64,000 bases of DNA, taken from positions 1-64,000 of IMG/VR virus record IMGVR_UViG_3300046804_003469; one strand, 5' to 3'. Made by a program: the position numbers and the translations under genes. Below are positions 1,441 to 24,915 of the stretch, piece by piece (within the stretch, counting starts at the first letter, position 1; every line of letters begins with the position of its first letter). The notes under the pieces are model-generated. The model had not been told where the DNA came from and did no database searches. It was given only the letters and a program-made list of their open reading frames with translations.

Positions 1441-1449
1441 GGTAACAAT

Positions 1450-5564: not shown

Positions 5565-5570
5565 TTTACT

Positions 5571-6410: not shown

Positions 6411-6411
6411 T

Positions 6412-6426
6412 TGATGTGGTATAATA
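6412..6426 (+). promoter_or_regulatory. Extended -10 promoter TGATGTGGTATAATA
   Basis: Exact 15-nt copy at 11120-11134; intergenic. Confidence 0.55.
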
Positions 6427-6429
6427 AAG

Positions 6430-7107: not shown

Positions 7108-7112
7108 ATCGT

Positions 7113-8604: not shown

Positions 8605-8614
8605 TCTAACCTTT

Positions 8615-9268: not shown

Positions 9269-9280
9269 TTAAAAACTATT

Positions 9281-10084: not shown

Positions 10085-10088
10085 ATTT

Positions 10089-11132: not shown

Positions 11133-11134
11133 TA
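11120..11134 (+). promoter_or_regulatory. Extended -10 promoter TGATGTGGTATAATA
   Basis: Identical to 6412-6426; about 25 nt before ORF 11159. Confidence 0.6.
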
Positions 11135-11158
11135 TACGAAAACTTTATTAAGAGAATT

Positions 11159-11911
11159 ATGAGCAAAAGTATTACAGTTATTTTAAATGGTTACAAAAGA
11201 AATAATCTGAAAGAACAAGTAGAAGCAATTAGAAATCAAACAGTTCCTGTCCAAGAAATTTTTTATTGGCAAAACACTGTACCTGGATTCTCTTATGATG
11301 AAGATACTTATTCTGAATTAAATTCTGCCCTTAGTAACTATAATTATGGTGTTTGGGCAAGATTTGCATATGCATTGAATGCAAGGACTGATTATGTTTG
11401 TGTATTTGATGATGATACTATTCCTGGAAATAAGTGGCTAGAGAATTGTTTAAACACTTATGAAACACATCCTGGTCTTTTGGGTGGAATTGGTCTCTGG
11501 TTTAAAAATAAAAACTATGAGTTAGAGACTCTTGAAGATGGACAACCTGCCAGATTTGGGTGGCATGTTAATAATAACGCTACAGTTCAAGTTGATATTG
11601 TTGGTCATTCTTGGTTTTTCTCTAGAGATCTTCTTTCAGTATTTTGGAGAGAAATGCCTGAGAAACATTGGACAATGTTGTGTGGAGAAGATATTCATTT
11701 CTCGCATATGATTCAAAAATACACTGATCTTAAAACATGGGTTCCTCCACATCCTTCAAATGATACTTCTATGTGGAGTAGTTTAAAGGCACTTCAATAT
11801 GGTGGAGATCATTTGGCAACAGCAAATATTACAGTTCAAACTGGTGAGATGGCTCAATATCTTTCTTATTGTGTTGATAATGGATTTAAACTTCTTAAAG
11901 ATTTAAAATGA
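11159..11911 (+). CDS. GT-A fold (GT2-like) glycosyltransferase
   Basis: ITVILNGYKR, VCVFDDDTIPG, GEDIHFS. Confidence 0.7.
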   Translation: MSKSITVILNGYKRNNLKEQVEAIRNQTVPVQEIFYWQNTVPGFSYDEDTYSELNSALSNYNYGVWARFAYALNARTDYVCVFDDDTIPGNKWLENCLNTYETHPGLLGGIGLWFKNKNYELETLEDGQPARFGWHVNNNATVQVDIVGHSWFFSRDLLSVFWREMPEKHWTMLCGEDIHFSHMIQKYTDLKTWVPPHPSNDTSMWSSLKALQYGGDHLATANITVQTGEMAQYLSYCVDNGFKLLKDLK

Positions 11912-12783
11912 TTAATATTTTTTATTCTGATTCATATTTTGGATATACAAATAGAATGTGTGGTCCAAAAAAAGTTGTTTGTAATTTAATTGAATCTTTA
12001 GAACAGGAAAAAGTACCTTATTCAATTAATGAAGATGTTTATGATTATAATTTCTTACTTCAATATGATGCAATAGGTTATCAAAAACATGAAAATTTAG
12101 AGCATGAAAGTTGTGTTATAGGACCACAATTCTGGCCTTTTGATGGAGATATCTATGGTAATTTTCTAATTGATAACCCACAATACTATAAAAAGTTAAT
12201 TGCTCCATCTTATTGGGTCAAAGATTTATTGGTAGATAAGTTTAAATTACCAGAAAATAAAGTTTCTATTTGGCCAGTTGGAATCAAAGATCTTTCTGGA
12301 ATTAAAAATGAGACAAGTACAACTGATTGTTTAATCTATTTCAAATCTCGTTCAGAAGAGGATCTTGAATTTGTTAAGAACTTTTTAAACTATAAGAGAA
12401 TTACCTATAAAGTAATCGGGTATGGATCTTATTCTGAGGAGGAATTTTATGAAGAACTTTCAAAAGTAAAATTTTGTTTTATCTTAAATCATACTGAAAG
12501 TCAAGGTATTGCAATTCAGGAAATGATGTCAGCAAATATTCCTCTTCTTGTTTGGGATGTTCCATATTGGGATCACAAAGGAGAAGAATATAAACTTCCA
12601 TCTAGTTCTGTTCCTTATTGGAATTCCGAATGTGGAGAAAAGTTTTATACTGCCTTTGACATTGAATCGACTTTTGAAAAATTCTATGATAAAATGGAAC
12701 AGTACAGTTCTAGAAAAATATACGATACTGAGTTATCTTATAAAGTTACTGTTGAAAAAATATTAAAAATTTTTGAAGAATGA
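11908..12783 (+). CDS. GT-B fold (GT4-like) glycosyltransferase
   Basis: ESQGIAIQEMMS (Ex7E motif), IAPSYWV. Confidence 0.7.
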   Translation: MINIFYSDSYFGYTNRMCGPKKVVCNLIESLEQEKVPYSINEDVYDYNFLLQYDAIGYQKHENLEHESCVIGPQFWPFDGDIYGNFLIDNPQYYKKLIAPSYWVKDLLVDKFKLPENKVSIWPVGIKDLSGIKNETSTTDCLIYFKSRSEEDLEFVKNFLNYKRITYKVIGYGSYSEEEFYEELSKVKFCFILNHTESQGIAIQEMMSANIPLLVWDVPYWDHKGEEYKLPSSSVPYWNSECGEKFYTAFDIESTFEKFYDKMEQYSSRKIYDTELSYKVTVEKILKIFEE

Positions 12784-13469
12784 AAATTTGTATTCTCACG
12801 ATTGCTACTAATAAGTATCTTCAATTTGTAGAAAAACTCTATGATAATATTGAAGAAAGATTTTTAAATGGACATGAAATTAGTTGCTTGTTATTTACAG
12901 ATCATGAAGTAGAAACTTCAGAAAATATCAAAGTACATTATATTGATCATGAACCTTGGCCTATGCCAACACTTAAAAGATATAATTACTTTTTAAAGGA
13001 AAAGGATTTTATTCTTCAGCATGATTATTGTTTTTATTTCGATGCAGATATGAGGATTGATAATCCTGTTGGAGATGAAATTCTTGGTGATTTAGTAGGT
13101 ACTAAACATCCATATCAATCCTTTCATAAACTTGATGAAATGTCTTATGAGAGGAGACCAGAATCTTTAGCATATGTTCCTTATGGTGAAGGTGAAACTT
13201 ATTATGCTGGAGGATTTAATGGTGGAAAAACAACAAGATTCTTGGAGATGGCAGAAGTAATTGCCAATAATGTAAATAGGGATCTTGAGAACAATATAGT
13301 TGCAGTATGGCATGATGAAAGTCATATGAATAGATATATGATTGATAATCCACCAACCTTAAGTTTAACTCCATCGTATTGTTATGCTGAAGAATTTTAT
13401 GGAACGGATTATCCATATGAACCAAAAATTATTGCATTAAAGAAGAATCACAATGAACTTAGATCTTAG
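12780..13469 (+). CDS. GT6 (ABO-type alpha-1,3-Gal/GalNAc transferase family)
   Basis: IATNKY, WPMPTLKRY, FDADM, YYAGGFNGG, WHDESHMNRY. Confidence 0.9.
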   Translation: MKICILTIATNKYLQFVEKLYDNIEERFLNGHEISCLLFTDHEVETSENIKVHYIDHEPWPMPTLKRYNYFLKEKDFILQHDYCFYFDADMRIDNPVGDEILGDLVGTKHPYQSFHKLDEMSYERRPESLAYVPYGEGETYYAGGFNGGKTTRFLEMAEVIANNVNRDLENNIVAVWHDESHMNRYMIDNPPTLSLTPSYCYAEEFYGTDYPYEPKIIALKKNHNELRS

Positions 13470-14097
13470 AGAAATTCCTGCTGTTTATTTAAATCTTGAA
13501 AAGCATACTGAAAAAAATGAAAGTATGCAAAATCTTCTTAAAGAATGTGGATTTAAAAATATTATTCGGGTAGAGGGAGTTGCAAGACCAGATAACACTG
13601 TTGCTGGATGTTCTGCTGCTCATTATAAAGGACTTGGTGAAATTGATCCTCCATTTATTCTTTTTGAGGATGATTGTGTAATTAAAAATTTTAGACCAGT
13701 AATTGAGATCCCAGATGATGCTGATGCAGTTTATCTTGGAATTTCATCATGGGGTAGAATGAATGGTCATTCGGGACCTTACCTTCAATATAAACATATT
13801 AAAGATGATTTATACCAAGTTTATAATATGCTTGGTGGTCATGCGATCTTGTATTTAACTGAAGATTATGTTAAAATGTGCCAGAGAATTACATATCATG
13901 CTGGTTATATAATCGAAGATTATCAAGATATTGGATTTGCTGAAGTTCAGCGTTGGTTTAATGTTTATACGTTTGATGATCCATTCTTTTTCCAAACAAG
14001 TGGATACCATGGAACTGTAAATCCACTTACAAGTTATCCTACAGAAGAATGTTTCAAATATGATAAAAACTATTTCTTACCTGAGAGAGTTGTATGA
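13453..14097 (+). CDS. GT25-like glycosyltransferase
   Basis: VYLNL, GCSAAH, ILFEDD, DAVYLG, GHAILY. Confidence 0.65.
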   Translation: MNLDLREIPAVYLNLEKHTEKNESMQNLLKECGFKNIIRVEGVARPDNTVAGCSAAHYKGLGEIDPPFILFEDDCVIKNFRPVIEIPDDADAVYLGISSWGRMNGHSGPYLQYKHIKDDLYQVYNMLGGHAILYLTEDYVKMCQRITYHAGYIIEDYQDIGFAEVQRWFNVYTFDDPFFFQTSGYHGTVNPLTSYPTEECFKYDKNYFLPERVV

Positions 14098-14993
14098 TTA
14101 AAAGTTTAGTTACTGGTGGTGCTGGATTTATTGGTTCAAACCTCGTAGACCGTTTACTTGAAATGGGACACGAGGTTGTTGTAATTGATAATGAGTACTC
14201 TGATGCTCATGATCAATTTTATTGGAATGATAAAGCACAAAACTATAAGTATGATATTCGTGATTATAAAAATACTCGACCTTTGTATGATGGAGTAGAT
14301 TATGTATTTCATATTGCAGCAGAGGCACGTATTCAACCAGCAATTTTAAATCCTATTGAAGCAGTAAGTATTAATTCTGTTGGAACTTGTACTGTTCTTC
14401 AGTGTGCTCGTGAAGCAGGCGTTAAACGTGTAATGTATTCTTCTACATCTTCTGCATATGGAACTAACCAACCTCCAAATGTGGAAACTCAACCAGACGA
14501 TTGTTTAAATCCTTATTCAGTTTCTAAGGTGAATGGTGAAAAACTATGTAAGATGTATACAGATCTCTTTGGATTACCTACAGTTATCTTTAGGTATTTC
14601 AATGTATATGGTGAAAGGCAACCTTTAAGAGGTCAATATGCTCCTGTAATTGGTATTTTCCTCCGTCAACGTGCTGCTGGAGAACCTTTAACTATTGTTG
14701 GTGATGGAGAACAACGTAGAGATTTTACTTACGTTGGAGATGTTGTAAATGCTAATGTTATGGCAGCAATTTCAAATCCAGATCCAGAAGCATTTGGACA
14801 AGTTTATAATGTAGGAACTAATAATAATTATTCAATCAATCAAATTGCAAGAATGTTTGATCATCAAACTGTAAATATTGCTCCTAGACCTGGAGAAACT
14901 AAATTAAGTCTTGCAAACAACCAAAAAATTAAAAAAACATTTGGTTGGCAACCAACTGTAAAACTTGAAAATTGGATACAAGAAAACTTATGA
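14094..14993 (+). CDS. NAD-dependent NDP-sugar 4-epimerase (GalE/WbpP-like)
   Basis: TGGAGFIGS, SSTSSAYG, YSVSK, RYFNVYG, GDGEQRRDF. Confidence 0.9.
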   Translation: MIKSLVTGGAGFIGSNLVDRLLEMGHEVVVIDNEYSDAHDQFYWNDKAQNYKYDIRDYKNTRPLYDGVDYVFHIAAEARIQPAILNPIEAVSINSVGTCTVLQCAREAGVKRVMYSSTSSAYGTNQPPNVETQPDDCLNPYSVSKVNGEKLCKMYTDLFGLPTVIFRYFNVYGERQPLRGQYAPVIGIFLRQRAAGEPLTIVGDGEQRRDFTYVGDVVNANVMAAISNPDPEAFGQVYNVGTNNNYSINQIARMFDHQTVNIAPRPGETKLSLANNQKIKKTFGWQPTVKLENWIQENL

Positions 14994-15745
14994 ATCGTAT
15001 TACTGATTATTCTGAATTGCAAAATAATATTGTAACTTGGATTAAAGAATATGCTAATTCTAATGGCATTGAATCTCTTGTAGTGGGAATTTCTGGAGGA
15101 ATCGATTCTTCAGTTGTTTCCACTCTTTGTGCTGAGACAGGACTTCCTACTTATGCTTTGTCTATGCCTTTGATGCAAATTTCATCTCAATCTGAATTAT
15201 CTAATACACACCGAGAATTTCTTTCAAAGAAATATAATAATGTAATTTCACTCAAAATTGATTTATCAACAACCTACAATCAGTTTTTAACAGCATCTAG
15301 ATTTTGGTTAGGTGAAGATATGGTCTCCAATAATTTAGCATTGGCAAATACAAAATCTCGTCTTCGTATGGTGACTCTTTATCAAGTTGCTGGATCCGTT
15401 AAGGGTATTGTTGTTGGTACTGGTAATAAAGTCGAAGATTATGGTGTAGGATTCTATACTAAATATGGTGACGGAGGAGTTGACATTGCTCCTATTGCTG
15501 ATCTTTATAAAACTGAAGTATGGGAACTTGGAAAGCATCTTGGTGTAGATCAACGTATTATTGATGCACAACCTACAGATGGTCTCTGGGAAGACGGAAG
15601 AACCGATGAAAATCAAATCGGTGCTTCCTATGCTGAACTTGAAGAAGCAATGGAAAATGGAACTGGTCCTGCAGTTGAAATACTTAAAAAATTCAACGCA
15701 CAAAATAAACACAAAATGATTTCTATTCCTACATTTAAACTATGA
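14990..15745 (+). CDS. nadE: NH3-dependent NAD+ synthetase
   Basis: GISGGIDS PP-loop, NTKSRLRM, GTGNKVE, GFYTKYGDG, PIADLYKTEV, PTDGLW..TDE. Confidence 0.9.
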   Translation: MNRITDYSELQNNIVTWIKEYANSNGIESLVVGISGGIDSSVVSTLCAETGLPTYALSMPLMQISSQSELSNTHREFLSKKYNNVISLKIDLSTTYNQFLTASRFWLGEDMVSNNLALANTKSRLRMVTLYQVAGSVKGIVVGTGNKVEDYGVGFYTKYGDGGVDIAPIADLYKTEVWELGKHLGVDQRIIDAQPTDGLWEDGRTDENQIGASYAELEEAMENGTGPAVEILKKFNAQNKHKMISIPTFKL

Positions 15746-16893
15746 AGATTGGAGTTATCGGAGCAGGAAGACTTGGCATTTGCTTTGCTCTTCTAATGGA
15801 AAAAGCAGGATACGATATATTGGTATCTGATATTCGTGAGAATTATGTTAATGATCTAAACAATAAAAAGATCATAACAAATGAACCTCATGTCCAAGAA
15901 CTGCTGTCAAATTCTAAAAAAATTGTGGCAACTACGGACAATAAAAAAGTAATTGAAGAGTGTGATATTATTTTTACTTTAGTTGCTACACCTTCTCTTC
16001 CTGATGGCAGTTACGATGTAAGTTCCGTTTGGGAAGTTATTGACGACATTCAAAATTCTGAAAAGTCGAGAAATAAATTATTTGTTGTTGGTTGTACAAC
16101 AAATCCAGGAGACTGTGAGAAGTTCCAGGAAGAACTTTTACCTTATAGTGTTGATGTATTATATAATCCAGAATTTATTGCACAAGGATCTATTATCAAT
16201 GATCTTGAAAATGCAGACATGGTTTTGATTGGTGGTAATAATCCTTCCAACATTGAAAAGATTAAAGAAATTTATTATAAGATTCAAATCAACAAACCAA
16301 ATATTTGTACAATGTCTCCTAAGGCAGGTGAAATTACAAAAATTGCTATCAACTGCTTCTTAACTTCAAAGATTAGTTTTGCCAATATGATTGGTGAAGT
16401 GATGTGTTTATCTGGAATGGAAGATGAAGTATCTGACGTTCTAACTGCAATTGGAAGTGATACAAGAATAGGAGGAAAATATCTGAAATATGGATATGGA
16501 TTTGGTGGTCCATGTTTCCCTAGAGATAATAGATCCTTTGCTTCTTATGCTGAAAGCGTTGGATGTCAATTTAATATTGGAAGAACTACTGATAATTTTA
16601 ATAAAAAGCATGTAGAGTTTTTAAAAAATTATTTTATAAACAAAAACTCAAATAATGAACCATATTACTTTGATTATATTTCTTATAAGAAGGGAACTGA
16701 TATACTGATAGAAAGTCAACAATATCAATTGTGTTTAGAATTATTGAATTCTGGATATGTAGTTTATGTAAATGATATAGAATCTGTTGTTGAACAAGTT
16801 AAAGAATCGTTAGAAAATAAATTTTATGATAGAATTAGATTTGTCAAAGATGAATCTGAGTTACCAGAAAAAATTTTAAAAATTAAATTTTAA
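15742..16893 (+). CDS. ugd: UDP-glucose 6-dehydrogenase family protein
   Basis: GAGRLG, VATPS, NPEFIAQG, KISFAN, GFGGPCFPRD. Confidence 0.8.
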   Translation: MKIGVIGAGRLGICFALLMEKAGYDILVSDIRENYVNDLNNKKIITNEPHVQELLSNSKKIVATTDNKKVIEECDIIFTLVATPSLPDGSYDVSSVWEVIDDIQNSEKSRNKLFVVGCTTNPGDCEKFQEELLPYSVDVLYNPEFIAQGSIINDLENADMVLIGGNNPSNIEKIKEIYYKIQINKPNICTMSPKAGEITKIAINCFLTSKISFANMIGEVMCLSGMEDEVSDVLTAIGSDTRIGGKYLKYGYGFGGPCFPRDNRSFASYAESVGCQFNIGRTTDNFNKKHVEFLKNYFINKNSNNEPYYFDYISYKKGTDILIESQQYQLCLELLNSGYVVYVNDIESVVEQVKESLENKFYDRIRFVKDESELPEKILKIKF

Positions 16894-16898
16894 GACTT

Positions 16899-17750
16899 AT
16901 GAAAATAACTATACTTGGTTCTAGTGGTCAAATTGGAACTTACCTTACAGAATATTTGCGTGAAAAGGGTCACTATGTTTACGAGTTTGATGTTGTAAAC
17001 AATCCTCATGAGGATATGACTCAGATTCCAAATCCTCTTTTGGAAGAAAGAATTGCAGATTCTGATTTTGTATTCTTCCTTGCATTTGATGTTGGTGGAT
17101 CTCGTTATCTTAAAAAGTACCAACATACTTTCCAATTTATTAATAATAATTGCCGTTTGATGGCAAATGCTTTTACTATACTTCAGAAGTATAATAAGAG
17201 ATTTATTTTTGCTTCGTCTCAGATGAGCAATATGAGTTATTCTCCTTATGGAGTTCTTAAGAACGTTGGAGAACTTTATACTAAATCCTTGAATGGTTTG
17301 ATTGTAAAGTTTTGGAATGTCTATGGTATTGAAAAGGATCATGAAAAAGCACATGTCATCACAGACTTTATTCGTAAAGGATTTGAGACTGGTGTGATTG
17401 ATATGATGACTGATGGTGAAGAAGAAAGAGATTTTCTTTATGCTGAAGACTGCTGTGAAGCATTAGAAATAGTGATGGAAAAATATACTGAATTTACATA
17501 TGAAGATGATCTTCATATTACAAGTTTCAAAAACACTAAAATTAGAGATGTTGCCAGTATTATATCTGGACAGTTTAATTTGATTGGAATGCATGACGTA
17601 AAAGTTCAACCATCAGAAGAAAAAGATAGTGTTCAATTAGATAAAAGAAATCAAGCGAGTACTTTTATTACAAAATGGTGGATTCCAAAGACAACAATTG
17701 ATCAAGGTATTGCAAAAGTATTTGAGGAAATGAAGAATGATCGGAAATAA
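16899..17750 (+). CDS. NAD-dependent epimerase/dehydratase
   Basis: LGSSGQIG, FASSQ, YGVLK, NVYG, DGEEERDFLY. Confidence 0.8.
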   Translation: MKITILGSSGQIGTYLTEYLREKGHYVYEFDVVNNPHEDMTQIPNPLLEERIADSDFVFFLAFDVGGSRYLKKYQHTFQFINNNCRLMANAFTILQKYNKRFIFASSQMSNMSYSPYGVLKNVGELYTKSLNGLIVKFWNVYGIEKDHEKAHVITDFIRKGFETGVIDMMTDGEEERDFLYAEDCCEALEIVMEKYTEFTYEDDLHITSFKNTKIRDVASIISGQFNLIGMHDVKVQPSEEKDSVQLDKRNQASTFITKWWIPKTTIDQGIAKVFEEMKNDRK

Positions 17751-18591
17751 TACTATTGGTACAATGGGACGTTTGGGAAATCAAATGTTTCAGTATGCAT
17801 CATTAAAGGGAATTGCTGTCAATAATGGATTTGAGTATACAATACCGCCACAAAATCCTCAGATTCAAATTGATAATTATGGTCTTTTAGAGGCATTTGA
17901 ATTATCCACCAATAAAAATATTGGTTGGAGTGAATCTGAGTTTGGAATACAGGAAAGGTTCTTTCATTTCGATGAAGAACTTTTTAACAATTGTAGGGAT
18001 GATGTAAATTTGGTCGGATTTTTTCAATCTGAAAAGTACTTTAAACATATTGAAAAAGAACTTCGTCAGGATTTTACTTTTAAATCGGATTGGTTAACTC
18101 CATGTCTTGAATTTAGAAAAGAATTTGAAAATCAAGAAGTTTTGTTTCTTCATGTTCGTAGGGGAGATCCAAATCTTTCTGATAAACGTGGGTTTAAATG
18201 GGCGTATGTGAATCTTCAGGATCAACATCCTGTTCAATCTTTAGAATATTATGAACAGGCATTGAAAGAATTTCCTGAAGATATGCCAGTGATTGTTTTT
18301 TCTGATTCAATTGAATGGTGTAAAGAGCAAGAAATTTTTAAACCAGATAGGTTTATGTTCTCTGAACCTGAGCATAAACATTCTGATGGTGCTTTAGTTC
18401 CTTACACTGATTTATGCTTGATGTCTTTATGTGATCATGCTATAATTGCGAATAGTTCTATGAGTTGGTGGGGTGCCTGGTTAATTAAAAATCCAAATAA
18501 AAAAGTAATTGCACCAAAAACTTGGTTTGGATCTGCCTATGCAGATAAAGATACTAAAGATCTTTATTGTGAAAATTGGATAGTACTATGA
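17737..18591 (+). CDS. GT11 alpha-1,2-fucosyltransferase-like
   Basis: GRLGNQMFQYA, GFFQSEKYF, HVRRGD, NSSMSWWGAW. Confidence 0.9.
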   Translation: MIGNNTIGTMGRLGNQMFQYASLKGIAVNNGFEYTIPPQNPQIQIDNYGLLEAFELSTNKNIGWSESEFGIQERFFHFDEELFNNCRDDVNLVGFFQSEKYFKHIEKELRQDFTFKSDWLTPCLEFRKEFENQEVLFLHVRRGDPNLSDKRGFKWAYVNLQDQHPVQSLEYYEQALKEFPEDMPVIVFSDSIEWCKEQEIFKPDRFMFSEPEHKHSDGALVPYTDLCLMSLCDHAIIANSSMSWWGAWLIKNPNKKVIAPKTWFGSAYADKDTKDLYCENWIVL

Positions 18592-18601
18592 AAATCTGAA
18601 G

Positions 18602-18865
18602 ATGATTAGAAAAATAAGAGTATTTTTATGGAGTATAGCTTTTGAATTAGAAAATATACTATACCCATATAGTGCATTTTCTGAAGAAGACTATTATATT
18701 AAAGTAAAAAATGATGAGACTGGTGAAAACTATTTGATTATAGATTGGATCAAAGCACACAAAGAACAAATAGAAAGATTACAAGAAGAAATGATATGGG
18801 TAAAATCTGAGTTGAATAGAATTCAAGAATCAATCAAAAATCATGACGATTATGGACAAAAATAA
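18602..18865 (+). CDS. Hypothetical protein with coiled-coil C-terminus
   Basis: Fills the operon gap; heptad pattern. Confidence 0.55.
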   Translation: MIRKIRVFLWSIAFELENILYPYSAFSEEDYYIKVKNDETGENYLIIDWIKAHKEQIERLQEEMIWVKSELNRIQESIKNHDDYGQK

Positions 18866-19658
18866 ATCAGCATACAAACTTAAAAATTTTGGGCCAGTAT
18901 ATTACCTAAATCTGGATGGTCAACCAGAAAGGGCACAATATATGGAGGATCAATTTAAGTATTGGGAAGTTGAAAACTACACTCGTATTTCTGCCTATGA
19001 TGGTAGAGAAGATGATTTGGGTGATATTATTAAAGGTAAATATCCAGATATGATGACATCTGGAGAAGTTGGATGCGTTACATCACACCTTAAAGCAATT
19101 AAGCATTGGTATGAAACTTCAGATAGTCCTTATGCGATTATTATGGAAGATGATTGTAATTTAGATCCAGTAAGATTTTGGAATTTTACTTGGGATGATT
19201 TTATTTGTAGAGTACCATATGATTGGGATGTAGTTCAAATTGCAATCATTTGTACTGGAGATATTCACGTAAGACTTCATAAGAGGTTTGTGAATGATTT
19301 CTCCACTGCTTGTTATATTATAAATCGTCATCATGCTGAAAAACTTTTAAAACATCATATTCGTGGTGACAAATATAAACTTGATAATGGTGTAAAACCT
19401 CGTCCTGTTGCTGATGATTTGATCTATAATTCTGGAAATACCTATAGCATTCCTCTACTTTTATATAAAATTGAATTGGGTTCTTCAATTCATCCTGAAC
19501 ATATTGACATTTTCCACAGAGCAAGTCATGATGGACTTGTCAATTTCTGGACTCAAAATGGAGCACAGTTTGCTATTGAATCTTTAATGGATTATGATCC
19601 ATATTTGGGGAGAGTTGTTGAAAATACCGCTGCTCAACAAGCACAACAACCCTCTTGA
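18843..19658 (+). CDS. GT25 (LPS-biosynthesis) glycosyltransferase
   Basis: YYLNLD..ER, RISAYDG, GEVGCVTSHL, IMEDD, STACYII. Confidence 0.85.
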   Translation: MTIMDKNKSAYKLKNFGPVYYLNLDGQPERAQYMEDQFKYWEVENYTRISAYDGREDDLGDIIKGKYPDMMTSGEVGCVTSHLKAIKHWYETSDSPYAIIMEDDCNLDPVRFWNFTWDDFICRVPYDWDVVQIAIICTGDIHVRLHKRFVNDFSTACYIINRHHAEKLLKHHIRGDKYKLDNGVKPRPVADDLIYNSGNTYSIPLLLYKIELGSSIHPEHIDIFHRASHDGLVNFWTQNGAQFAIESLMDYDPYLGRVVENTAAQQAQQPS

Positions 19659-19712
19659 CATGATTGAAAAAGTAGTTTAGGATATAAACCAATCTTAATA
19701 TTTAATTAAGAC
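19655..19712 (+). promoter_or_regulatory. Sigma70-type promoter TTGACA-17-TAGGAT followed by degenerate Pho-box-like repeats
   Basis: TTGACA 19655, TAGGAT 19678; CTTAATAT 19694 and ATTAAGAC 19705 are 11 nt apart. Confidence 0.5.
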
Positions 19713-19781
19713 TCCTAAATAACGAAGACTTCTTTTTGTAAGAATTCTTTACATTTGTCGTTTAGTACACAAAACAAATTT

Positions 19782-21263
19782 ATGAAACTCAAACAACTGA
19801 TGCTTGCGCCTGTTGCTCTGGGAATGGTTGCTCCTGTTGCTGCGAATGCTGCAGATCTCAATATGGTAGCAGTCAACCAATATTCCTCGGAACAGGTTAC
19901 AAGCGTTTCACAACTGTCTGATGTGCAACCTACCGATTGGGCATATCAAGCACTTAGCAATCTTGTAGAGCGTTATGGTTGCGTCGCTGGTTATCCCAAC
20001 GGCACTTTTGGTGGTGGTCGTGCAATGACTCGTTATGAGGCAGCAGCACTTTTGAATGCTTGTCTGGATCGTGTAACTGAAGTTACCGATGAATTGAAGC
20101 GTCTTACTAATGAATTTGCTTCTGAACTTGCTGTTCTCCGTGGTCGTGTAGATAAACTGGAAGCACAAGTTGGTCAACTTGAAGCAACTCAATTTTCTAC
20201 CACCACAAAACTGCGTGGTGAAGCAACCTTTGTTCTCGGTGGTGTAGATGGTGCTCAACTCTCTAACGGAACTAATGTTGGAAATACTGCTTTCAACTAT
20301 GATCTCCGTCTGAATTTTGACACTTCGTTCACTGGTAAAGACCTGCTCCGTACTCGTCTGCGTTCGGGTAATTTCTCCAGTCAACCCTTTGGTTCTAGTT
20401 CGTCACTCTTCAAACTGGATAAGGCAGAAAGCACTGCTAACAGTGTTATTCTTGATCGTCTGTACTATCAGTTCCCCGCTCTCACTAAAGGTCTGACTCT
20501 GACTGCTGGTGCTCTGGTTCGTAACACCGAAATGGCGTGGGTTCCTACTGCATATAAGTCTGATATTCTGGACTTCTTTGCTGTTGCTGGTGCTCCTGGT
20601 GTTTATAACAAAGCAACTGGTGCTGGTTTTGGTGCCCAATGGGCACAATCTGGTAAGAAAGGTTTCGTTGCTGGTGTGAACTATGTTGCCCAAAATGGCA
20701 ATGATTCCACCAAAGGTGAATTTAACTCTACTGGTGCTCTGAATACTCTGGCACAGATTGGTTATCGTGCTCCTCAGTATGGTATTGCTTTTGGTTACCG
20801 TTATGGTACTGAAGGAACCCGTGTTCGTACTTTTAATGCTATTGATGGTGGTTCTGGTGTTCTTGCTCCTGGACAAACCTCTAACGGTTATGCTATCAAT
20901 GCTTATTGGCAACCAAAGACCTCTGGCATTATTCCTTCCATCAGTGCTGCTTATGGATGGAACAATGTGAGTGGTGCAACAACTCCTAATGGTGCTACTA
21001 ACTCTCAAACCTGGATGGCAGGTGTTCAGTGGAGTGATGTATTTGCTAAGGGTAATGCTGCTGGTTTTGCTATTGGTGCTCCTGGAAATGCTGCTTCTCT
21101 GGATTCTGATCAGAAAGCAATCATGTGGGAAACTTTCTATCGTTATAAAGTCAGTGACAACATCAGTATTACTCCTGCTGTGTTCTATGTTTCTAACAAC
21201 CAATCGTTTAGTGGTGCTTCCTCTAACTATGGTGGTGTGATTCAGACTAAGTTCACTTTCTGA
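19782..21263 (+). CDS. som: Cyanobacterial Som/OprB-type outer-membrane porin with SLH domain
   Basis: Signal peptide, SDVQPTDWAYQAL..LVERYGC SLH domain, coiled coil, FSTTTKL, beta-barrel ending in TKFTF. Confidence 0.9.
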   Translation: MKLKQLMLAPVALGMVAPVAANAADLNMVAVNQYSSEQVTSVSQLSDVQPTDWAYQALSNLVERYGCVAGYPNGTFGGGRAMTRYEAAALLNACLDRVTEVTDELKRLTNEFASELAVLRGRVDKLEAQVGQLEATQFSTTTKLRGEATFVLGGVDGAQLSNGTNVGNTAFNYDLRLNFDTSFTGKDLLRTRLRSGNFSSQPFGSSSSLFKLDKAESTANSVILDRLYYQFPALTKGLTLTAGALVRNTEMAWVPTAYKSDILDFFAVAGAPGVYNKATGAGFGAQWAQSGKKGFVAGVNYVAQNGNDSTKGEFNSTGALNTLAQIGYRAPQYGIAFGYRYGTEGTRVRTFNAIDGGSGVLAPGQTSNGYAINAYWQPKTSGIIPSISAAYGWNNVSGATTPNGATNSQTWMAGVQWSDVFAKGNAAGFAIGAPGNAASLDSDQKAIMWETFYRYKVSDNISITPAVFYVSNNQSFSGASSNYGGVIQTKFTF

Positions 21264-21286
21264 TAAACTACTCACATTTTGAGTTG

Positions 21287-21314
21287 AACCACCCCAGAAA
21301 GGGGTGGTTTTTTT
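21287..21314 (+). terminator. Rho-independent terminator
   Basis: AACCACCCC-agaaa-GGGGTGGTT plus T run. Confidence 0.85.
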
Positions 21315-21352
21315 AATTAAAATCTTAACCAAATCTTAGTTGACCTTAAGAT
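21312..21352 (+). promoter_or_regulatory. Pho-box-like direct repeats upstream of pstS
   Basis: CTTAACCA (21324), CTTAGTTG (21335), CTTAAGAT (21345); resembles the cyanobacterial PyTTAAPyPy(T/A) repeat with about 11-nt period. Confidence 0.65.
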
Positions 21353-21403
21353 TGTCCTCTAGTATTATTACTTATGAAGTCAATTTACTTCTAAAAACTT
21401 TTT

Positions 21404-22369
21404 ATGAAACTTAAAAATTTTATTGCTATTGGTCTGGTTACTGCTCCTGTTGCTGCACTTGCTGGATCTTCTCTGAATGGTGCTGGTGCCACCTTCCCAT
21501 CACCAATTTATCAACGTTGGTTCCAAGATTATGCACGAACTTCTGGGAGTAGGGTTAATTATCAGTCCGTTGGTTCTGGTGCTGGTGTTCGCCAATTCCT
21601 TGCGGGAACAGTTGATTTCGCAGCAAGCGATGAACCAATCAAACCCGCAGAGGCAGCAAAAGTGAAACGTGGTGTCGTTCAAATTCCTATGGTAGGTGGA
21701 ACGATTGCTATTGCCTATAATAAAACTGGATGTACTCTGAAACTCTCTCAGAAACAAACTGTGGATATTTTTGCTGGACGTATTAAGGATTGGAAACAAC
21801 TTCCTAACTGTGGTAATGGTACTATTCGTGTGGTACATCGTGCTGATGCTTCTGGTACTACCTTTGCTTTCACTAACTCTCTTGAATCATTTGGTGGTTG
21901 GACTTATGGTGTTGCTAAATCCGTAAACTGGCCTACTGGTATTGCTTCTAAGGGTAACGAAGGTGTTGCTGGTACGATCAAAAACACTCCTGGTTCTATC
22001 GGTTATGTAAATACTGGATTTGTTCGTGCCAACAAACTCCAAGCAGCAGCAATTCAAAACAAGGCAGGTAAGTTCATTCTTCCTTCTGCTTCCACTGGTT
22101 CTGCTGCTCTGAATAGTATTACTCTAGATACAAACCTTGCAGGTGAAAATCCTAATCCTTCTGGTGTAAATGCATATCCCATTTCTACTCTGACATGGAT
22201 TCTTGCCTATAAGACTGGTAATGGTTCTAAGGCAGGTGATATTCGCTCTGCTCTAAACTATGCTCTAAGTTCTAAGGCACAGATGATTGCTGATGACCTT
22301 GGATATGTTCCTCTTGCTGGAAGTGTTCTAAACAAAGCACGTCTTGCAGTTGGTCGTATCGGTCAGTAA
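21404..22369 (+). CDS. pstS: Phosphate ABC transporter periplasmic binding protein
   Basis: GAGATFP, YQSVGSGAG, DFAASD, RADASGTT, KGNEGV, YPISTLTW. Confidence 0.95.
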   Translation: MKLKNFIAIGLVTAPVAALAGSSLNGAGATFPSPIYQRWFQDYARTSGSRVNYQSVGSGAGVRQFLAGTVDFAASDEPIKPAEAAKVKRGVVQIPMVGGTIAIAYNKTGCTLKLSQKQTVDIFAGRIKDWKQLPNCGNGTIRVVHRADASGTTFAFTNSLESFGGWTYGVAKSVNWPTGIASKGNEGVAGTIKNTPGSIGYVNTGFVRANKLQAAAIQNKAGKFILPSASTGSAALNSITLDTNLAGENPNPSGVNAYPISTLTWILAYKTGNGSKAGDIRSALNYALSSKAQMIADDLGYVPLAGSVLNKARLAVGRIGQ

Positions 22370-22399: not shown

Positions 22400-22437
22400 A
22401 AGGGGTGCTTGACACCTCTTTATTTTTCCTATATAAT
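22400..22437 (+). promoter_or_regulatory. Terminator hairpin overlapping a consensus sigma70 promoter for hli
   Basis: AAGGGGTG-cttga-CACCTCTT plus T-rich tail; TTGACA 22409, 17 nt, TATAAT 22432. Confidence 0.8.
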
Positions 22438-22464
22438 TGTGTAACAATTCGTAATAAAACGAAA

Positions 22465-22674
22465 ATGACTGTAACAAAAAATGAATTTGGACAAATGAAT
22501 ATGTGGGCAAAAGAACCTTCGATGTATATGACGAAGGAAGATCTTGAACGTTATGGTATTGAACCTTATGCAGAAAAAGCGGAGAAAATGAATGGACGTT
22601 GGGCAATGCTCGGCATTATTGCTGGTGCTATTTCTTATGCTCTCACTGGTAAACTTTTCTTCGGAGTCTTCTGA
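22465..22674 (+). CDS. hli: High-light inducible protein with N-terminal extension
   Basis: AEKMNGRWAMLG chlorophyll-binding helix. Confidence 0.9.
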   Translation: MTVTKNEFGQMNMWAKEPSMYMTKEDLERYGIEPYAEKAEKMNGRWAMLGIIAGAISYALTGKLFFGVF

Positions 22675-22844: not shown

Positions 22845-22960
22845 AAAATCTTTTTACTGAGAAAGCAGAACGTATTAATGGTTGGGCTGCTATGATTGGA
22901 ATTATTGCTGGTATGGGTTCTTATCTTGCCACTGGTCAACTGATTCCTGGTGTATTCTGA
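22841..22960 (+). CDS. hli: High-light inducible protein, 39 aa (not in ORF track)
   Basis: MKNLFTEKAERINGWAAMIGIIAGMGSYLATGQLIPGVF; GAGGAG RBS. Confidence 0.9.
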   Translation: MKNLFTEKAERINGWAAMIGIIAGMGSYLATGQLIPGVF

Positions 22961-22971
22961 TGGAGGTTACT

Positions 22972-23496
22972 ATGCGTAAAGAAGGTTATCAAATTGCTCA
23001 AGTTGAATTTGTATTTCGTGAATCTGGCGAGTTTGTAACTCGTACAACTGAAGATCTTTTCAATGGAAAACGTGTTGTCATTTTTAGCCTGCCTGGTGCT
23101 TTCACTCCTACTTGCAGTGCCTATCAGTTACCTGGATTCGAAGAGAAATACAACGACTTTCTTGGTCTCGGCATCGACGATATTTATTGCGTCTCTGTTA
23201 ATGACGGGTTTGTGATGAACGCCTGGGCACAAGATCAAAACATTAAAAACGTAAAACTTATTCCCGATGGAAATGCTTATTTCACCCGTTCGATGGGTAT
23301 GCTCGTTCGTAAATCAAACCTTGGGTTCGGTGAGCGCAGTTGGCGTTACGCTGCTGTGGTGAATAACGGAATCATCGAAAAACTTTTTGTTGAGGATGGA
23401 CAACGTGATAATGCAGATTCTGATCCATATGAGGTAACAACTCCAGAAAATGTTTTAAATTATCTAACACTTTCACAAAAACCTGTTGCAGTTTAA
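22972..23496 (+). CDS. Type II (Prx5-like) peroxiredoxin
   Basis: LPGAFTPTCS, SVNDGFVMNAW, DGNAYFT, RSWRYA; GGAGG RBS before ATG 22972. Confidence 0.9.
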   Translation: MRKEGYQIAQVEFVFRESGEFVTRTTEDLFNGKRVVIFSLPGAFTPTCSAYQLPGFEEKYNDFLGLGIDDIYCVSVNDGFVMNAWAQDQNIKNVKLIPDGNAYFTRSMGMLVRKSNLGFGERSWRYAAVVNNGIIEKLFVEDGQRDNADSDPYEVTTPENVLNYLTLSQKPVAV

Positions 23497-23561: not shown

Positions 23562-24233
23562 ATGACATTAGATCTTCATAACTTTTTTAAGTATTATGAT
23601 GATAGTAATTCAAACCATGTAGCAGCAGTTCAATGGTTAGAGGATAATCTTCCTGCTGAATATATGGATGACTCTGAAACTGAATGGGTTAGAATTTTTA
23701 GAACTAAACCTCCAACTCCAGCAGTATTAGATGTTCCCTACTTTAATCAAGTAGATAACTATAGAGATGCACATAGAACTTGTAACTCTTCATCGTGTGC
23801 TATGTGTCTTGCTTTCCTGAAACCAGGAAGCATCAAAGGTGATGATGAATATATTAAAAAAGTGTTCGCAATTGGAGATACTACTGACCATGCTGTACAG
23901 ACAAAAGTTCTGGCAGGTTATGGTGTTAAGTCACACTTTAGTTACAATCTTTCTTTTGCTGATATTGATAAGAGTCTTGATGCTGGGAAACCTGTCGTTA
24001 TTGGCATCTTACACAGGGGTCCTCTTTCTGCTCCTACTGGCGGTCACATGGTTGTAGTGATTGGTAAGACACCAGATGGTAAAGGTTATTACTGTAATGA
24101 TCCATATGGTTCATGTAATGATAATTACACTGGCCCAGTAACAAACGGTAAGAAAACCGTTTATACCAAAGCAATGCTCAAGTATCGTTGGTGCCCAGGT
24201 GGCAATGACGGTTGGGGTAGAATTTTCGACTGA
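23562..24233 (+). CDS. C39-like cysteine peptidase with an N-terminal domain shared with the next gene; probable cell-wall hydrolase
   Basis: VPYFNQ, CNSSSCAM, GHMVVVIG, NDPYG (Cys-His-Asp). Confidence 0.8.
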   Translation: MTLDLHNFFKYYDDSNSNHVAAVQWLEDNLPAEYMDDSETEWVRIFRTKPPTPAVLDVPYFNQVDNYRDAHRTCNSSSCAMCLAFLKPGSIKGDDEYIKKVFAIGDTTDHAVQTKVLAGYGVKSHFSYNLSFADIDKSLDAGKPVVIGILHRGPLSAPTGGHMVVVIGKTPDGKGYYCNDPYGSCNDNYTGPVTNGKKTVYTKAMLKYRWCPGGNDGWGRIFD

Positions 24234-24246
24234 TAGGAGAACAATC

Positions 24247-24915
24247 ATGGCAAAGGTAGATTTACACAACTTTTTTAAATATTATGATGACAAAAATCCT
24301 AATCATGTAAAGGCGGTTCAATGGATGGAAGATCATCTTCCCATCAAATACTTAGAAGATAACTCTGAATGGGCAGAAATTTTTAGAGGAAAAAAGACTA
24401 GTGCTGCACCAGCCCCTGCCGCTGCTGCAGCTCCAGTCGTAGGTGGTGATGATGTACCTATGATGGGCATCAAATTAATCAAAGAGTTTGAAGGATGTAG
24501 ATTAAATGCTTATCCTGATCCTCTTTCTGGTGGACTTCCTATTACAATTGGGTGGGGTTGTACTCGTAAGAAGGATGGATCTCCATTCCATCTTGGAGAT
24601 ACAATCACTCAAGCAGAAGCAGACGAACTTTTAATTGAAGAATGCAAACATAATTTCCTTCCATCACTCCGTAAAATTCCACATTGGAATGAAATGAGTG
24701 ATGGTAAAAGAGGGGCCCTATTATCTTTTGCATATAATTTGGGTGCTGGATTTTACGGTGGTGATAATTTTAATACTATTACTAAACGTTTGAAAAATAA
24801 AGAGTGGGATTTAGTTCCCGATGCATTGTATCTCTACAGAAATCCTGGTTCAAATGTAGAAGCAGGACTTGCACGTAGAAGAAAGGCTGAAGGTGAATCT
24901 TGGAAAAAAGGTTAA
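24247..24915 (+). CDS. GH24 lysozyme/endolysin with shared N-terminal domain and Ala/Pro linker
   Basis: IKEFEG..AYPD..TIGWG, SFAYNLG, GLARRR.AE; AGGAG RBS before ATG 24247. Confidence 0.9.
   Translation: MAKVDLHNFFKYYDDKNPNHVKAVQWMEDHLPIKYLEDNSEWAEIFRGKKTSAAPAPAAAAAPVVGGDDVPMMGIKLIKEFEGCRLNAYPDPLSGGLPITIGWGCTRKKDGSPFHLGDTITQAEADELLIEECKHNFLPSLRKIPHWNEMSDGKRGALLSFAYNLGAGFYGGDNFNTITKRLKNKEWDLVPDALYLYRNPGSNVEAGLARRRKAEGESWKKG

What the first reader, a model, noticed from the sequence alone, without database searches (positions are those of the whole stretch)
19655..22369. Complete host-type porin next to pstS, both with Pho-box-like repeats
Seen: a full SLH-plus-barrel Som porin directly upstream of pstS, with codon usage like psbA (GGT, GCT, TTC, AAC) and unlike the AT-rich island. 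Clear CTTAA-type repeats precede pstS and weaker ones precede the porin. Known: phage pstS can be controlled by host PhoB, and some host som porins are induced by phosphate stress. Inference: a two-part phosphate-scavenging module; alternatively the porin displaces the phage receptor. Phage porins appear much less often than pstS in my recollection.
Basis: partly seen in the sequence, partly recalled or inferred. Interest (0 to 1): 0.6.

Follow-up and report, generated by a model that had tools for sequence, protein, structure and literature searches.

The report
Cyanophage outer-membrane porin plus pstS cassette
A freshwater cyanophage carries a complete outer-membrane porin gene and a phosphate-binding protein gene that together copy a phosphate-uptake locus of its Cyanobium-type hosts, and this virus-borne porin, barely noted so far, turns out to be common in lake viruses.

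Summary
Window 19782-21263 encodes a complete porin: signal peptide, SLH domain, coiled-coil stalk and a 16-strand OprB barrel. Window 21404-22369 encodes a complete PstS. Each gene has its own promoter and terminator.

The window is the start of a 215-kb, T4-like cyanomyovirus contig from a freshwater metagenome. The porin is not a one-off. IMG/VR holds 462 stretches encoding relatives, and the 80 fetched are 80-86% identical, all in phage-like DNA and under purifying selection (dN/dS about 0.2). 23 of the 72 loci with enough downstream sequence have pstS directly after the porin.

On a tree, all viral porins form one clade. That clade sits inside a 100/100-supported group whose host members mostly lie in a CHAD-porin-pstS phosphate locus of freshwater picocyanobacteria.

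The host cassette and the phage cassette share gene order, a leader hairpin, a terminator and 11-nt-phased CTTAACC-type Pho boxes before pstS. In this phage only pstS has a clear Pho box. The porin has sigma-70-like and late-promoter-like motifs, but 45 of 80 relatives carry the same Pho pair upstream of the porin.

Viral porin leaders lack the Yfr1 sRNA target that most host porin genes have.

A phosphate function is inferred, not shown. An iron or general-diffusion role remains possible.

The parts
19655..19683 (+). sigma-70-like promoter of the porin gene, TTGACA-17 nt-TAGGAT. It lacks the CTTAACC repeat pair that is fused to the -35 in many relatives.
   Evidence: 10 of 12 matches to the consensus. 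Comparison with relatives.
19693..19712 (.). Degenerate 11-nt-phased repeat pair that is also a palindrome, TCTTAATATTTAATTAAGAC. It is the homologue of the conserved leader element CTTAAG-N5-YTTAAG of relatives.
   Evidence: One-mismatch Pho-pair match on the minus strand at 19695-19710, chance-level alone. The conserved form is present in 42 of 80 relatives.
19715..19721 (+). CTAAATA, a T4-type late-promoter-like motif.
   Evidence: In the 215-kb genome, 12 of 21 CTAAATA and 37 of 61 ATAAATA lie within 70 nt upstream of a called gene. (C/A)TAAATA is present upstream of the porin in 60 of 80 relatives.
19724..19749 (+). Leader stem-loop, GAAGA...TTCTT. The host leader has a counterpart, GACTTC-CTTTGT-GAAGTC.
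   Evidence: Consensus fold of 14 viral leaders: 5 pairs, 3 of them with compensatory changes, weak energy. Host leaders. The single-sequence fold is not significant.
19756..19768 (+). Conserved leader box TGTCGTTTAGTAC. It lies where host porin leaders carry TATCGGTGTGAGGAC, which contains the complement of the Yfr1 core.
   Evidence: GTGTGAGGA is present upstream of 109 of 147 host porin genes and 0 of 82 viral porin genes.
19782..21263 (+). Porin gene, 493 aa. Signal peptide aa 1-23 (by inspection), SLH about aa 46-88, coiled-coil stalk aa 84-136, 16-strand barrel aa 141-492, C-terminal QTKFTF.
21286..21317 (+). Intrinsic-terminator-like hairpin GAACCACCCC-AGAAA-GGGGTGGTTT followed by a T run.
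   Evidence: A hairpin with a different stem sequence stands at the same place in all viral cassettes with pstS and in the host cassettes.
21312..21352 (+). Pho-box-like array: TTTAATTA, CTTAACCA, CTTAGTTG, CTTAAGAT. The central pair is at exact 11-nt phase.
   Evidence: The SphR consensus CTTAACCT is from PMC1906773.
21340..21368 (+). pstS promoter, TTGACC-17 nt-TATTAT. The -35 overlaps the repeats.
21404..22369 (+). pstS, 321 aa, the periplasmic phosphate-binding protein, with an N-terminal signal peptide (by inspection).
22400..22420 (+). Terminator-like hairpin after pstS. It overlaps the -35 of the next gene's perfect-consensus promoter (22409-22437).

Best explanation
The two genes are a virus-borne copy of the CHAD-porin-pstS phosphate-acquisition locus of freshwater Cyanobium-type picocyanobacteria. 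An ancestor of a group of freshwater T4-like cyanophages probably captured it once as a cassette. The cassette included the leader, the terminator and the pstS promoter. It has been kept under purifying selection since.

Proposed working (inferred, not shown):
1. The porin is made with a Sec signal peptide and inserted into the host outer membrane by the host's own machinery. It is tied to the cell wall through its SLH domain and stalk.
2. The added diffusion channels let more phosphate, or small phosphate esters, reach the periplasm.
3. PstS is exported to the periplasm, binds phosphate and hands it to the host PstCAB transporter.
4. pstS is switched on by the host's phosphate-stress regulator (PhoB/SphR) through the Pho boxes that overlap its -35.
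5. In this phage the porin is instead driven by a sigma-70-like early promoter and probably by a late-type promoter, so it would be made regardless of phosphate status. In more than half of the relatives the porin has the same Pho-box promoter.
6. The viral porin leader has lost the sequence through which the host sRNA Yfr1 represses som porin mRNAs, so it would escape that brake.
For: Shown by tools.
- Both genes are complete and score as members of their families.
- The contig is a 215-kb virus record rated 100% complete, with psbA/psbD and other cyanomyovirus matches nearby.
- 462 IMG/VR stretches encode relatives. The 80 fetched are 80-86% identical and have flank GC of 0.33-0.43.
- Median dN/dS is 0.20 at dS 0.63.
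- pstS follows the porin in 23 of the 72 loci with enough downstream sequence.
- The host porins nearest to the viral ones are the ones followed by pstS and preceded by a CHAD gene.
- Porin tree: the viral clade has 100/100 support. It lies inside a 100/100 clade with 18 host porins. Of those, 12 are pstS-linked, 2 are CHAD/ferritin-linked and 4 are futA-linked. Forty other host porins fall outside.
- In five host genomes the porin-adjacent pstS is the copy most like the phage's, 58-66%.
- Viral pstS genes are monophyletic (100/99) and separate from both marine phage pstS clades.
- Host and phage cassettes share the same architecture: leader hairpin, terminator after the porin, then phased repeats and a -10 before pstS.
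- Phased repeats occur in 25 of 25 viral pstS promoters (0.66 expected) and 24 of 37 host pstS promoters (0 expected).
- The strict repeat pair is unique in the 215-kb genome.
- In relatives, 81 of 83 strict matches lie in porin or pstS control regions.
- The 21-mer CTTAACCAAATCTTAGTTGAC stands before pstS here and before the porin in 18 of 80 relatives.
- The complement of the Yfr1 core is upstream of 109 of 147 host porin genes and 0 of 82 viral ones.

From the literature.
- The SphR box is CTTAACCT in tandem (PMC1906773).
- Porins SYNW2224 and PMM0709 rise under phosphate stress (PMC3865332 and PMC5451487).
- Yfr1 represses som mRNAs at the ribosome-binding site (PMC2796815).
- Phage PstS is studied as part of host phosphate uptake in P-SSM2 (bioRxiv 10.1101/2021.07.20.453049).
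Against: - There are no expression, binding or transport data. No RNA run holds the stretch.
- The porin of this window has no canonical Pho box, and its degenerate pair is chance-level on its own.
- Solute selectivity cannot be read from the sequence.
- NCBIfam names the subfamily 'iron uptake porin'.
- Four futA-linked host porins nest in the same clade.
- 19 of 49 pstS-less viral loci carry a ferritin-like gene after the porin.
- The pstS tree leaves the viral clade in an unresolved position, not as sister to the porin-linked host pstS, so co-capture rests on synteny.
- Two pstS-linked host porins fall outside the main clade.
- The viral-host sister branch has only 90/66 support.
- The related loci share ancestry, so counts over them are not independent.
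Confidence: 0.6

Rival explanations
1. The porin is a general-diffusion or iron-related channel. The phage carries it to raise outer-membrane permeability for whatever nutrient limits replication. pstS is only one of several partners, and phosphate is not its specific role.
For: NCBIfam places it in 'iron uptake porin' NF033921. futA/ABC-permease-linked host porins nest within the same 100/100 clade. 49 of the 72 viral loci with enough downstream sequence have no pstS after the porin, and 19 of those have a ferritin-like gene within 2.5 kb, as do S-SRM01 and host G111. The nearest solved folds are general porins: OprB, OmpM1 and OmpF.
Against: Most host members of the clade are CHAD- and pstS-linked, including all of the closest ones. 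The closest host (G111) has a Na/Pi cotransporter and a CHAD gene upstream. 45 of 80 viral porin genes carry the same Pho-type repeat pair that marks pstS promoters. The NCBIfam name covers the whole Som subfamily, not this clade.
Confidence: 0.22
2. The porin changes the infected cell's surface rather than its nutrition. It would replace or mask a host porin used as a receptor, giving superinfection exclusion or less loss of progeny on cell debris. Or it would stabilise the outer membrane's attachment to the wall during infection.
For: It has an SLH domain and a stalk, like the outer-membrane-tethering porin OmpM1. It is probably also transcribed late, from the CTAAATA motif. From memory: temperate coliphages carry porin genes (Lc of PA-2, NmpC) and surface-exclusion genes.
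Against: No tool result bears directly on it. The origin in a phosphate locus, the retained pstS partner and the Pho-type promoters in relatives are not explained by it. The viral porins are very uniform at 80-86% identity, unlike typical receptor arms-race genes.
Confidence: 0.1
3. The pair is host DNA in a chimeric assembly, or a decaying passenger without function.
For: GC is higher than in the flanks.
Against: GC3 is phage-like at 0.22-0.29, while host copies have GC of 0.56-0.70. The same gene stands in 80 fetched viral loci with phage-like flanks and in the cultured phage S-SRM01. The frames are intact and dN/dS is about 0.2. No host copy found is more than 64% identical.
Confidence: 0.02

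Closest known systems
pstS module of marine T4-like cyanophages (P-SSM2, S-SM1 and others), which responds to host phosphate stress
   Same: A host-derived pstS with a signal peptide in a cyanomyovirus, preceded by Pho-box-like repeats. The proposed logic is the same: phage PstS feeds the host PstCAB. The window's PstS scores 353 bits against the solved PstS 7XG8 (bioRxiv 10.1101/2021.07.20.453049). PhoBR control of phage pstS (Zeng and Chisholm 2012) is from memory.
   Different: The window's pstS is only 47-56% identical to marine phage pstS and belongs to a separate viral clade. In all six marine phages examined pstS is preceded by a small gene: it is annotated DUF680 in five, about 118 aa in P-SSM2 gp247, and is an unnamed hypothetical in S-TIM5. 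Only indirect modelling has linked gp247 to porins. Here the upstream gene is a 493-aa Som porin.
'porin' QPX48248.1 of the freshwater Synechococcus phage S-SRM01
   Same: 79.6% identical over the full length and in the same viral clade. It is the only full-length homologue among 50,697 phage records.
   Different: There it is not next to pstS. Two small ORFs and a Dps-like gene follow it. The paper describing that phage does not mention the porin.
CHAD-porin-pstS locus of freshwater Cyanobium, Vulcanococcus and Synechococcus
   Same: The same gene order and orientation, the same leader hairpin, a terminator after the porin, then phased CTTGA/CTTAACC/CATAAC repeats and pstS. The tree places the viral porins with these host porins.
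   Different: Identity is 52-64% for the porin (BLAST 52-62%; HMMER up to 64%) and 57-69% for pstS. Host GC is 0.56-0.67. The host leader carries the complement of the Yfr1 core and a CRP-like palindrome, which the phage lacks. The phage has no CHAD gene.
Phosphate-stress-induced Som/OprB porins of marine picocyanobacteria (PMM0709 'phoE', SYNW2224)
   Same: The same protein family (OprB domain). They are documented to increase under phosphate stress (PMC5451487 and PMC3865332).
   Different: I did not place these two proteins on the tree, so orthology with the viral clade is untested.
OmpM1 of Veillonella parvula (8BYT) and OprB of Pseudomonas putida (4GEY)
   Same: They are the best structural matches. 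OmpM1 shares the SLH-stalk-barrel build.
   Different: Sequence identity is 11-14% and the organisms are distant. The matches say nothing about solute preference.
Porins carried by temperate coliphages (Lc of PA-2, NmpC) and the Pho-regulon porins PhoE and OprP (from memory, not tested here)
   Same: They are precedents for a phage-borne porin and for a porin under phosphate control.
   Different: The barrel families differ. The phage cases are lysogenic conversion, not a lytic T4-like phage. None is paired with pstS.

Membership tests
Cyanobacterial Som-type porin (SLH + OprB; NCBIfam NF033921 por_somb) | SLH domain near the N-terminus | tested here: met
   Pfam PF00395, 33.6 bits against cutoff 20.8.
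Cyanobacterial Som-type porin (SLH + OprB; NCBIfam NF033921 por_somb) | OprB-family beta-barrel covering the rest of the protein, above the curated cutoffs | tested here: met
   PF04966, 53.4 bits against 22.9, matching profile positions 6-372 of 372. NF033921, 318.7 bits against 100, matching positions 1-485 of 485.
Cyanobacterial Som-type porin (SLH + OprB; NCBIfam NF033921 por_somb) | Fold: stalk helix plus a closed 16-strand barrel ending in an aromatic residue | tested here: met
   AlphaFold model with helix 84-136, 16 strands and barrel pLDDT above 90. Foldseek matches to OprB and OmpM1 at E about 1e-12. The C-terminus is ...QTKFTF.
Cyanobacterial Som-type porin (SLH + OprB; NCBIfam NF033921 por_somb) | Export signal, outer-membrane location and channel activity | not testable with these tools
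   A signal-peptide-like N-terminus, MKLKQLMLAPVALGMVAPVAANA/AD, is seen by inspection only.
PstS, phosphate ABC transporter binding protein (TIGR00975) | Equivalog score above the cutoff, and full-length similarity to solved PstS structures | tested here: met
   260.8 bits against 205. 353 bits to 7XG8 over residues 4-321.
PhoB/SphR (Pho) regulon member: pstS | Two or three tandem 8-bp CTTAACCT-like repeats with 3-bp linkers just upstream of a -10 | tested here: met
   CTTAACCA-aat-CTTAGTTG-ac-CTTAAGAT, then 10 nt, then TATTAT. It is unique in the 215-kb genome and conserved in 25 of 25 viral pstS promoters. The consensus is from PMC1906773.
PhoB/SphR (Pho) regulon member: porin of this window | The same repeats at a promoter | tested here: not met
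   There is only a one-mismatch pair on the minus strand at 19695-19710, downstream of the -10. That is chance-level in the window, 20 found against 22 expected. The feature is met in 45 of 80 relatives.
PhoB/SphR (Pho) regulon member (both genes) | Regulator binding and induction by phosphate starvation | not testable with these tools
   No RNA run holds the stretch.
Cyanophage auxiliary (host-derived) gene | Sits in a bona fide phage genome, recurs across phages, has host homologues and is under purifying selection | tested here: met
Iron-uptake porin (the name NCBIfam gives the subfamily) | Linkage to iron transport genes, or iron-responsive control | tested here: inconclusive
   This gene is linked to pstS. 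Four host copies in the same clade are linked to a FutA-like binding protein. 19 viral loci have a ferritin-like neighbour.

The most novel reading that the evidence does not exclude
Freshwater T4-like cyanophages carry a widespread and so far undiscussed class of auxiliary gene: an outer-membrane porin. It was captured together with pstS and their control regions from the host's phosphate locus. Most versions are wired to the host phosphate-stress regulator. All versions have been stripped of the target site for the host porin-repressing sRNA Yfr1. On this reading the virus re-plumbs the outer membrane of the infected cell, not only its periplasm and cytoplasm.
Probability: 0.45. Interest if true: 0.72.

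Novelty: new variant of a known kind. Interest (0 to 1): 0.62.

Why it matters
Phage control of host phosphate uptake is a textbook example of viral auxiliary metabolism, but it has so far been known only for the periplasmic PstS and for PhoA in marine phages. A virus-borne outer-membrane channel would extend that reach to the first permeability barrier.

It would also show capture of a whole host locus with its regulatory DNA. And it would give a natural experiment in regulatory rewiring: Pho box kept, moved or lost, and the sRNA site lost.

The gene is frequent in lake viromes and sits in one cultured phage (S-SRM01), so the idea can be tested directly. It also bears on phosphorus-limited lakes, where picocyanobacteria and their phages are abundant.

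Tried and rejected
- **Motif statistics in the window alone.** The strict pattern gives 1 match against 1.06 expected. With one mismatch it gives 20 against 22 expected. Neither supports the repeats by itself, so only position and conservation in relatives are used.
- **Rfam.** At a permissive threshold on the cassette, two host cassettes and a viral relative, it gave nothing for the leader or the 3' region. It found only tRNAs and a wcaG RNA in L015, plus two sub-threshold chance hits.
- **Leader RNA fold.** The single-sequence fold is not better than shuffles, z = -1.25.
- **pstS tree.** It was built to test co-capture. The viral clade is monophyletic, but its position relative to host porin-linked pstS is unresolved.
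- **Expression data.** No RNA run holds the stretch, and the two strong holders are freshwater DNA metagenomes from one sample, possibly the source. I did not use read laying because contigs cannot show transcription.
- **Host contamination or chimera.** Rejected.
- **Literature.** Eight full-text searches found no paper that discusses a Som-type porin in a cyanophage. The S-SRM01 paper does not mention it. The library lacks most subscription journals, so this is not proof that no such paper exists.
- **Calls that failed.**
  - The mixture-model tree timed out and was redone with LG+G4.
  - One genome search used a wrong 'of' argument.
  - One Pfam call used a wrong frame.
  - One Rfam call was over the size limit.
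  - One regex, for the leader box, was mistyped, and its zero count is not used.
- **Not attempted.** No complex prediction, because the report makes no binding claim. The big representative protein search was not needed.

Full report
**What is there**

Between 19655 and 22420 the + strand carries two separately punctuated genes. The first is a 493-aa protein (ATG 19782 to stop 21263). The ORF lister starts it at an upstream TTG, but every homologue begins MKLKQLMLAPVA at the ATG.

The protein has:
- an N-terminus that reads as a Sec signal peptide, by inspection;
- an SLH domain and an OprB-family barrel above Pfam's cutoffs;
- 318.7 bits on NCBIfam's Som-porin subfamily model, cutoff 100.

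An AlphaFold model built on 59 viral and host homologues has a long stalk helix (84-136) and 16 strands, with pLDDT above 90 in the barrel. Its best solved matches are OprB and OmpM1, the SLH-stalk-barrel porin of Veillonella.

The second gene (21404-22369) is a full-length PstS.

The control signals are laid out as follows:
- A terminator-like hairpin with a T run follows the porin (21286-21317).
- Another follows pstS (22400-22420).
- Sigma-70-like promoters stand before each gene: 19655-19683 and 21340-21368.

**Where it sits**

The window is the first 64 kb of a 215,027-bp IMG/VR virus record rated 100% complete. It comes from JGI metagenome 3300043446. The nearest cultured phages match only at psbA/psbD and a few T4-like genes, at 83-84%. 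The only runs that hold most of the stretch are labelled freshwater metagenome; they come from a single sample, possibly the source.

**The porin is a common viral gene**

Among 50,697 deposited phage genomes only S-SRM01, a Singapore reservoir phage, has a full-length homologue. It is 79.6% identical and annotated 'porin', and its paper does not mention it.

IMG/VR is different:
- 462 stretches there encode relatives.
- The 80 loci fetched are 80-86% identical to the window's protein.
- All sit in DNA of phage-like GC, 0.33-0.43 in the flanks against 0.44-0.49 in the gene.
- Many lie inside or after the phage tRNA cluster.
- Twelve diverse copies give median dN/dS 0.20 at dS 0.63.

The gene is therefore maintained by selection in phages.

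**The pairing with pstS recurs**

Of the 72 loci with at least 1.2 kb downstream of the porin, 23 have pstS directly downstream. Those pstS genes are 71-81% identical to the window's.

**Origin**

A scan of one genome per prokaryotic species found homologues almost only in freshwater Cyanobium, Vulcanococcus and Synechococcus. The best was 60% identical, and 64% in a wider family search.

The six closest host genes of the first scan were exactly the six followed by pstS. About seventy other loci, mostly tandem som arrays, had none. Wider fetching confirmed and refined this:
- The closest host copies lie between a CHAD-domain gene and pstS.
- In one genome they lie between Na/Pi-cotransporter-CHAD and a ferritin-like gene.
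- A slightly more distant set is linked to a FutA-like binding protein and an ABC permease.

The maximum-likelihood tree (LG+G4, 77 rows) gives three results:
- The viral porins form one clade with 100/100 support.
- They join 18 host porins in a clade with 100/100 support. Of those 18, 12 are pstS-linked, 2 are CHAD/ferritin-linked and 4 are futA-linked.
- Forty host porins without such neighbours fall outside, as do two pstS-linked ones.

An earlier 140-row tree agrees.

For pstS the picture is:
- In five host genomes the porin-adjacent pstS is the paralogue most like the phage's.
- Many other hosts have the orthologous pstS directly after CHAD with no porin between them.
- The viral pstS genes form their own clade (100/99), apart from both marine phage pstS clades.
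- Their position relative to the host groups is unresolved.

Co-capture of the pair therefore rests on synteny and on the shared non-coding architecture, not on the pstS tree.

The low GC3 (0.22-0.29), set against an overall GC of 0.56-0.70 in the host loci, and the depth of the viral clade show that the capture is old.

**Shared control regions**

In host cassettes the porin leader has a hairpin, GACTTC-CTTTGT-GAAGTC, followed by TATCGGTGTGAGGACCCGATG. After the porin comes a terminator hairpin, then three 8-nt repeats at 11-nt phase (CTTGAnnn / CTTAACCn / CATAACGA), then a -10 and pstS.

The viral cassettes have the same layout:
- a leader stem-loop with compensatory changes;
- a terminator whose stem sequence differs between lineages;
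- two phased repeats, CTTAACCAAATCTTAGTKGAC or TTTAACYTTYTCTTAAMC;
- a -10 such as TACAAT, TAAAAT or TATTAT.

The phased pattern is present in 25 of 25 viral pstS upstream regions (0.66 expected from shuffles) and in 24 of 37 host ones (0 expected). The repeat matches the CTTAACCT tandem box described for SphR, the cyanobacterial PhoB (PMC1906773).

In the window's genome the strict pair occurs once in 215 kb, before pstS. That single match is not significant by count alone.

**How the porin itself is controlled**

In 45 of 80 relatives the same strict pair lies upstream of the porin. In 32 it is fused to a TTGAC -35. In 18 it is the very 21-mer that precedes pstS in this window.

Most relatives then have three further elements:
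- a second, palindromic pair, CTTAAG-N5-YTTAAG, in 42 of 80;
- a (C/A)TAAATA motif, in 60 of 80;
- the leader hairpin.

In the window's genome (A/C)TAAATA is strongly concentrated just upstream of genes: 49 of 82 occurrences. That fits a T4-type late promoter.

The window's porin lacks the distal pair and keeps only a degenerate proximal one, which is chance-level on its own. My reading is that this phage makes the porin from ordinary early and late promoters, and only pstS from a phosphate-stress promoter. This reading is inferred.

**The Yfr1 site**

GTGTGAGGA is the exact complement of the core of the sRNA Yfr1, which represses som porin mRNAs at the ribosome-binding site in Prochlorococcus (PMC2796815). 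It lies just upstream of the start codon in 109 of 147 host porin genes, including all 12 that are both CHAD- and pstS-linked. It is present in none of 82 viral ones. The viral leader has TGTCGTTTAGTAC at the corresponding place. Loss of host sRNA control is a plausible consequence, but untested.

**Function**

Support for a phosphate role:
- the host locus of origin;
- the retained pstS partner;
- the Pho-type promoters;
- published phosphate-stress induction of family members, SYNW2224 and PMM0709.

Against certainty:
- there are no expression or transport data;
- the NCBIfam subfamily name is 'iron uptake porin';
- futA-linked host copies nest in the same clade;
- 19 of 49 pstS-less viral loci place a ferritin-like gene after the porin, as do S-SRM01 and host G111.

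A general or iron-related channel is therefore the main rival. Nothing supports or excludes the surface-remodelling or exclusion idea. Chimeric assembly is excluded.

**Comparison with the known**

In all six marine cyanomyoviruses examined, pstS is preceded by a small gene. Five of these are annotated DUF680 (about 118 aa in P-SSM2 gp247), and in S-TIM5 it is an unnamed hypothetical. A preprint tentatively models gp247 of P-SSM2 as porin-like. Here the same position is held by a bona fide porin of independent origin.

Eight searches of the held literature found no discussion of Som-type porins in cyanophages. The library is incomplete, so this is weak evidence of absence.

**Verdict**

The finding is a new variant of a known kind. 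The known kind is the cyanophage phosphate module under host control. The new parts are the outer-membrane component, the whole-cassette capture and the regulatory rewiring.

Noticed in passing
window 19756-19768; host loci L083, L085-L088, L151 (about 20 nt before the porin start): Host porin leaders carry GTGTGAGGA, the complement of the Yfr1 sRNA core, in 109 of 147 genes. All 82 viral porin genes lack it and have TGTCGTTTAGTAC at that place instead.
   Followed up: partly
L025:4880-5470 and 18 other viral loci; L001 (S-SRM01) 7977-8411; L191:9245-9820 (host G111): In 19 of 49 viral loci without pstS, a ferritin-like (Dps-type) gene lies within 2.5 kb downstream of the porin. The same is seen in S-SRM01 and in the closest host genome. 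This is a second recurrent partner of the viral porin.
   Followed up: partly
L230-L235 (P-SSM2, P-SSM7, S-SSM7, S-SM1, SynMITS9220M01, S-TIM5): In all six marine cyanophages examined, pstS is immediately preceded by a small gene. Five are annotated DUF680, and in S-TIM5 it is an unnamed hypothetical. This is the slot the Som porin holds in the window.
   Followed up: no
host loci L083, L085-L088, L151, between the porin stop and the terminator: The 3' untranslated region of many host porin genes holds CTCCTCAC(A/G)C, the Yfr1 core sequence itself. It is present in 42 of 147 genes as CTCCTCAC and in 21 more as TCCTCAC. The viral 3' region has ACTACTCA(C/T)A there. The meaning is unknown.
   Followed up: no
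host loci L085-L087, L151, about 100-120 nt before the porin start: A palindrome of the form TGTGTTCTGGAACACA (TGTG-N8-CACA, the CRP-family spacing) stands upstream of host cassette porins and is absent from the phage copies.
   Followed up: no
window 22405-22674 with promoter 22409-22437: The small ORF after pstS matches an annotated high-light-inducible protein gene of phage ACG-2014i (84.6% over 77 nt). It has a perfect TTGACA-17-TATAAT promoter whose -35 lies inside the pstS terminator hairpin.
   Followed up: no
window 373-19658: A long run of same-strand genes with very low GC (0.28-0.34) ends just before the porin. Its last gene is a family-25 glycosyltransferase (18843-19658). The same C-terminus (DYDPYLG...) precedes the porin in several relatives.
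   Followed up: partly
window 22882-23496: A redoxin/AhpC-type peroxiredoxin gene lies two genes downstream of pstS.
   Followed up: no
window 23562-24233 and 24199-24915: Two adjacent ORFs share an N-terminal segment (DLHNFFKYYDD.N.NHV.AVQW.ED.LP) but differ in the rest. This looks like a duplicated module with swapped C-terminal domains.
   Followed up: no
L015:4457-10365: In this viral relative the porin lies inside a cluster of eight tRNA genes, and a wcaG RNA motif (98.9 bits) lies 3 kb downstream.
   Followed up: no
L084 (RGYP01000505.1), L088, L090, L100, L149, L153, L156: Several contigs with cyanobacterial or viral porin genes are filed in MAGs labelled Gammaproteobacteria, Chitinophaga, Sphingobacterium, Klebsiella or Bifidobacterium. 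These are likely binning or labelling errors in public records.
   Followed up: no
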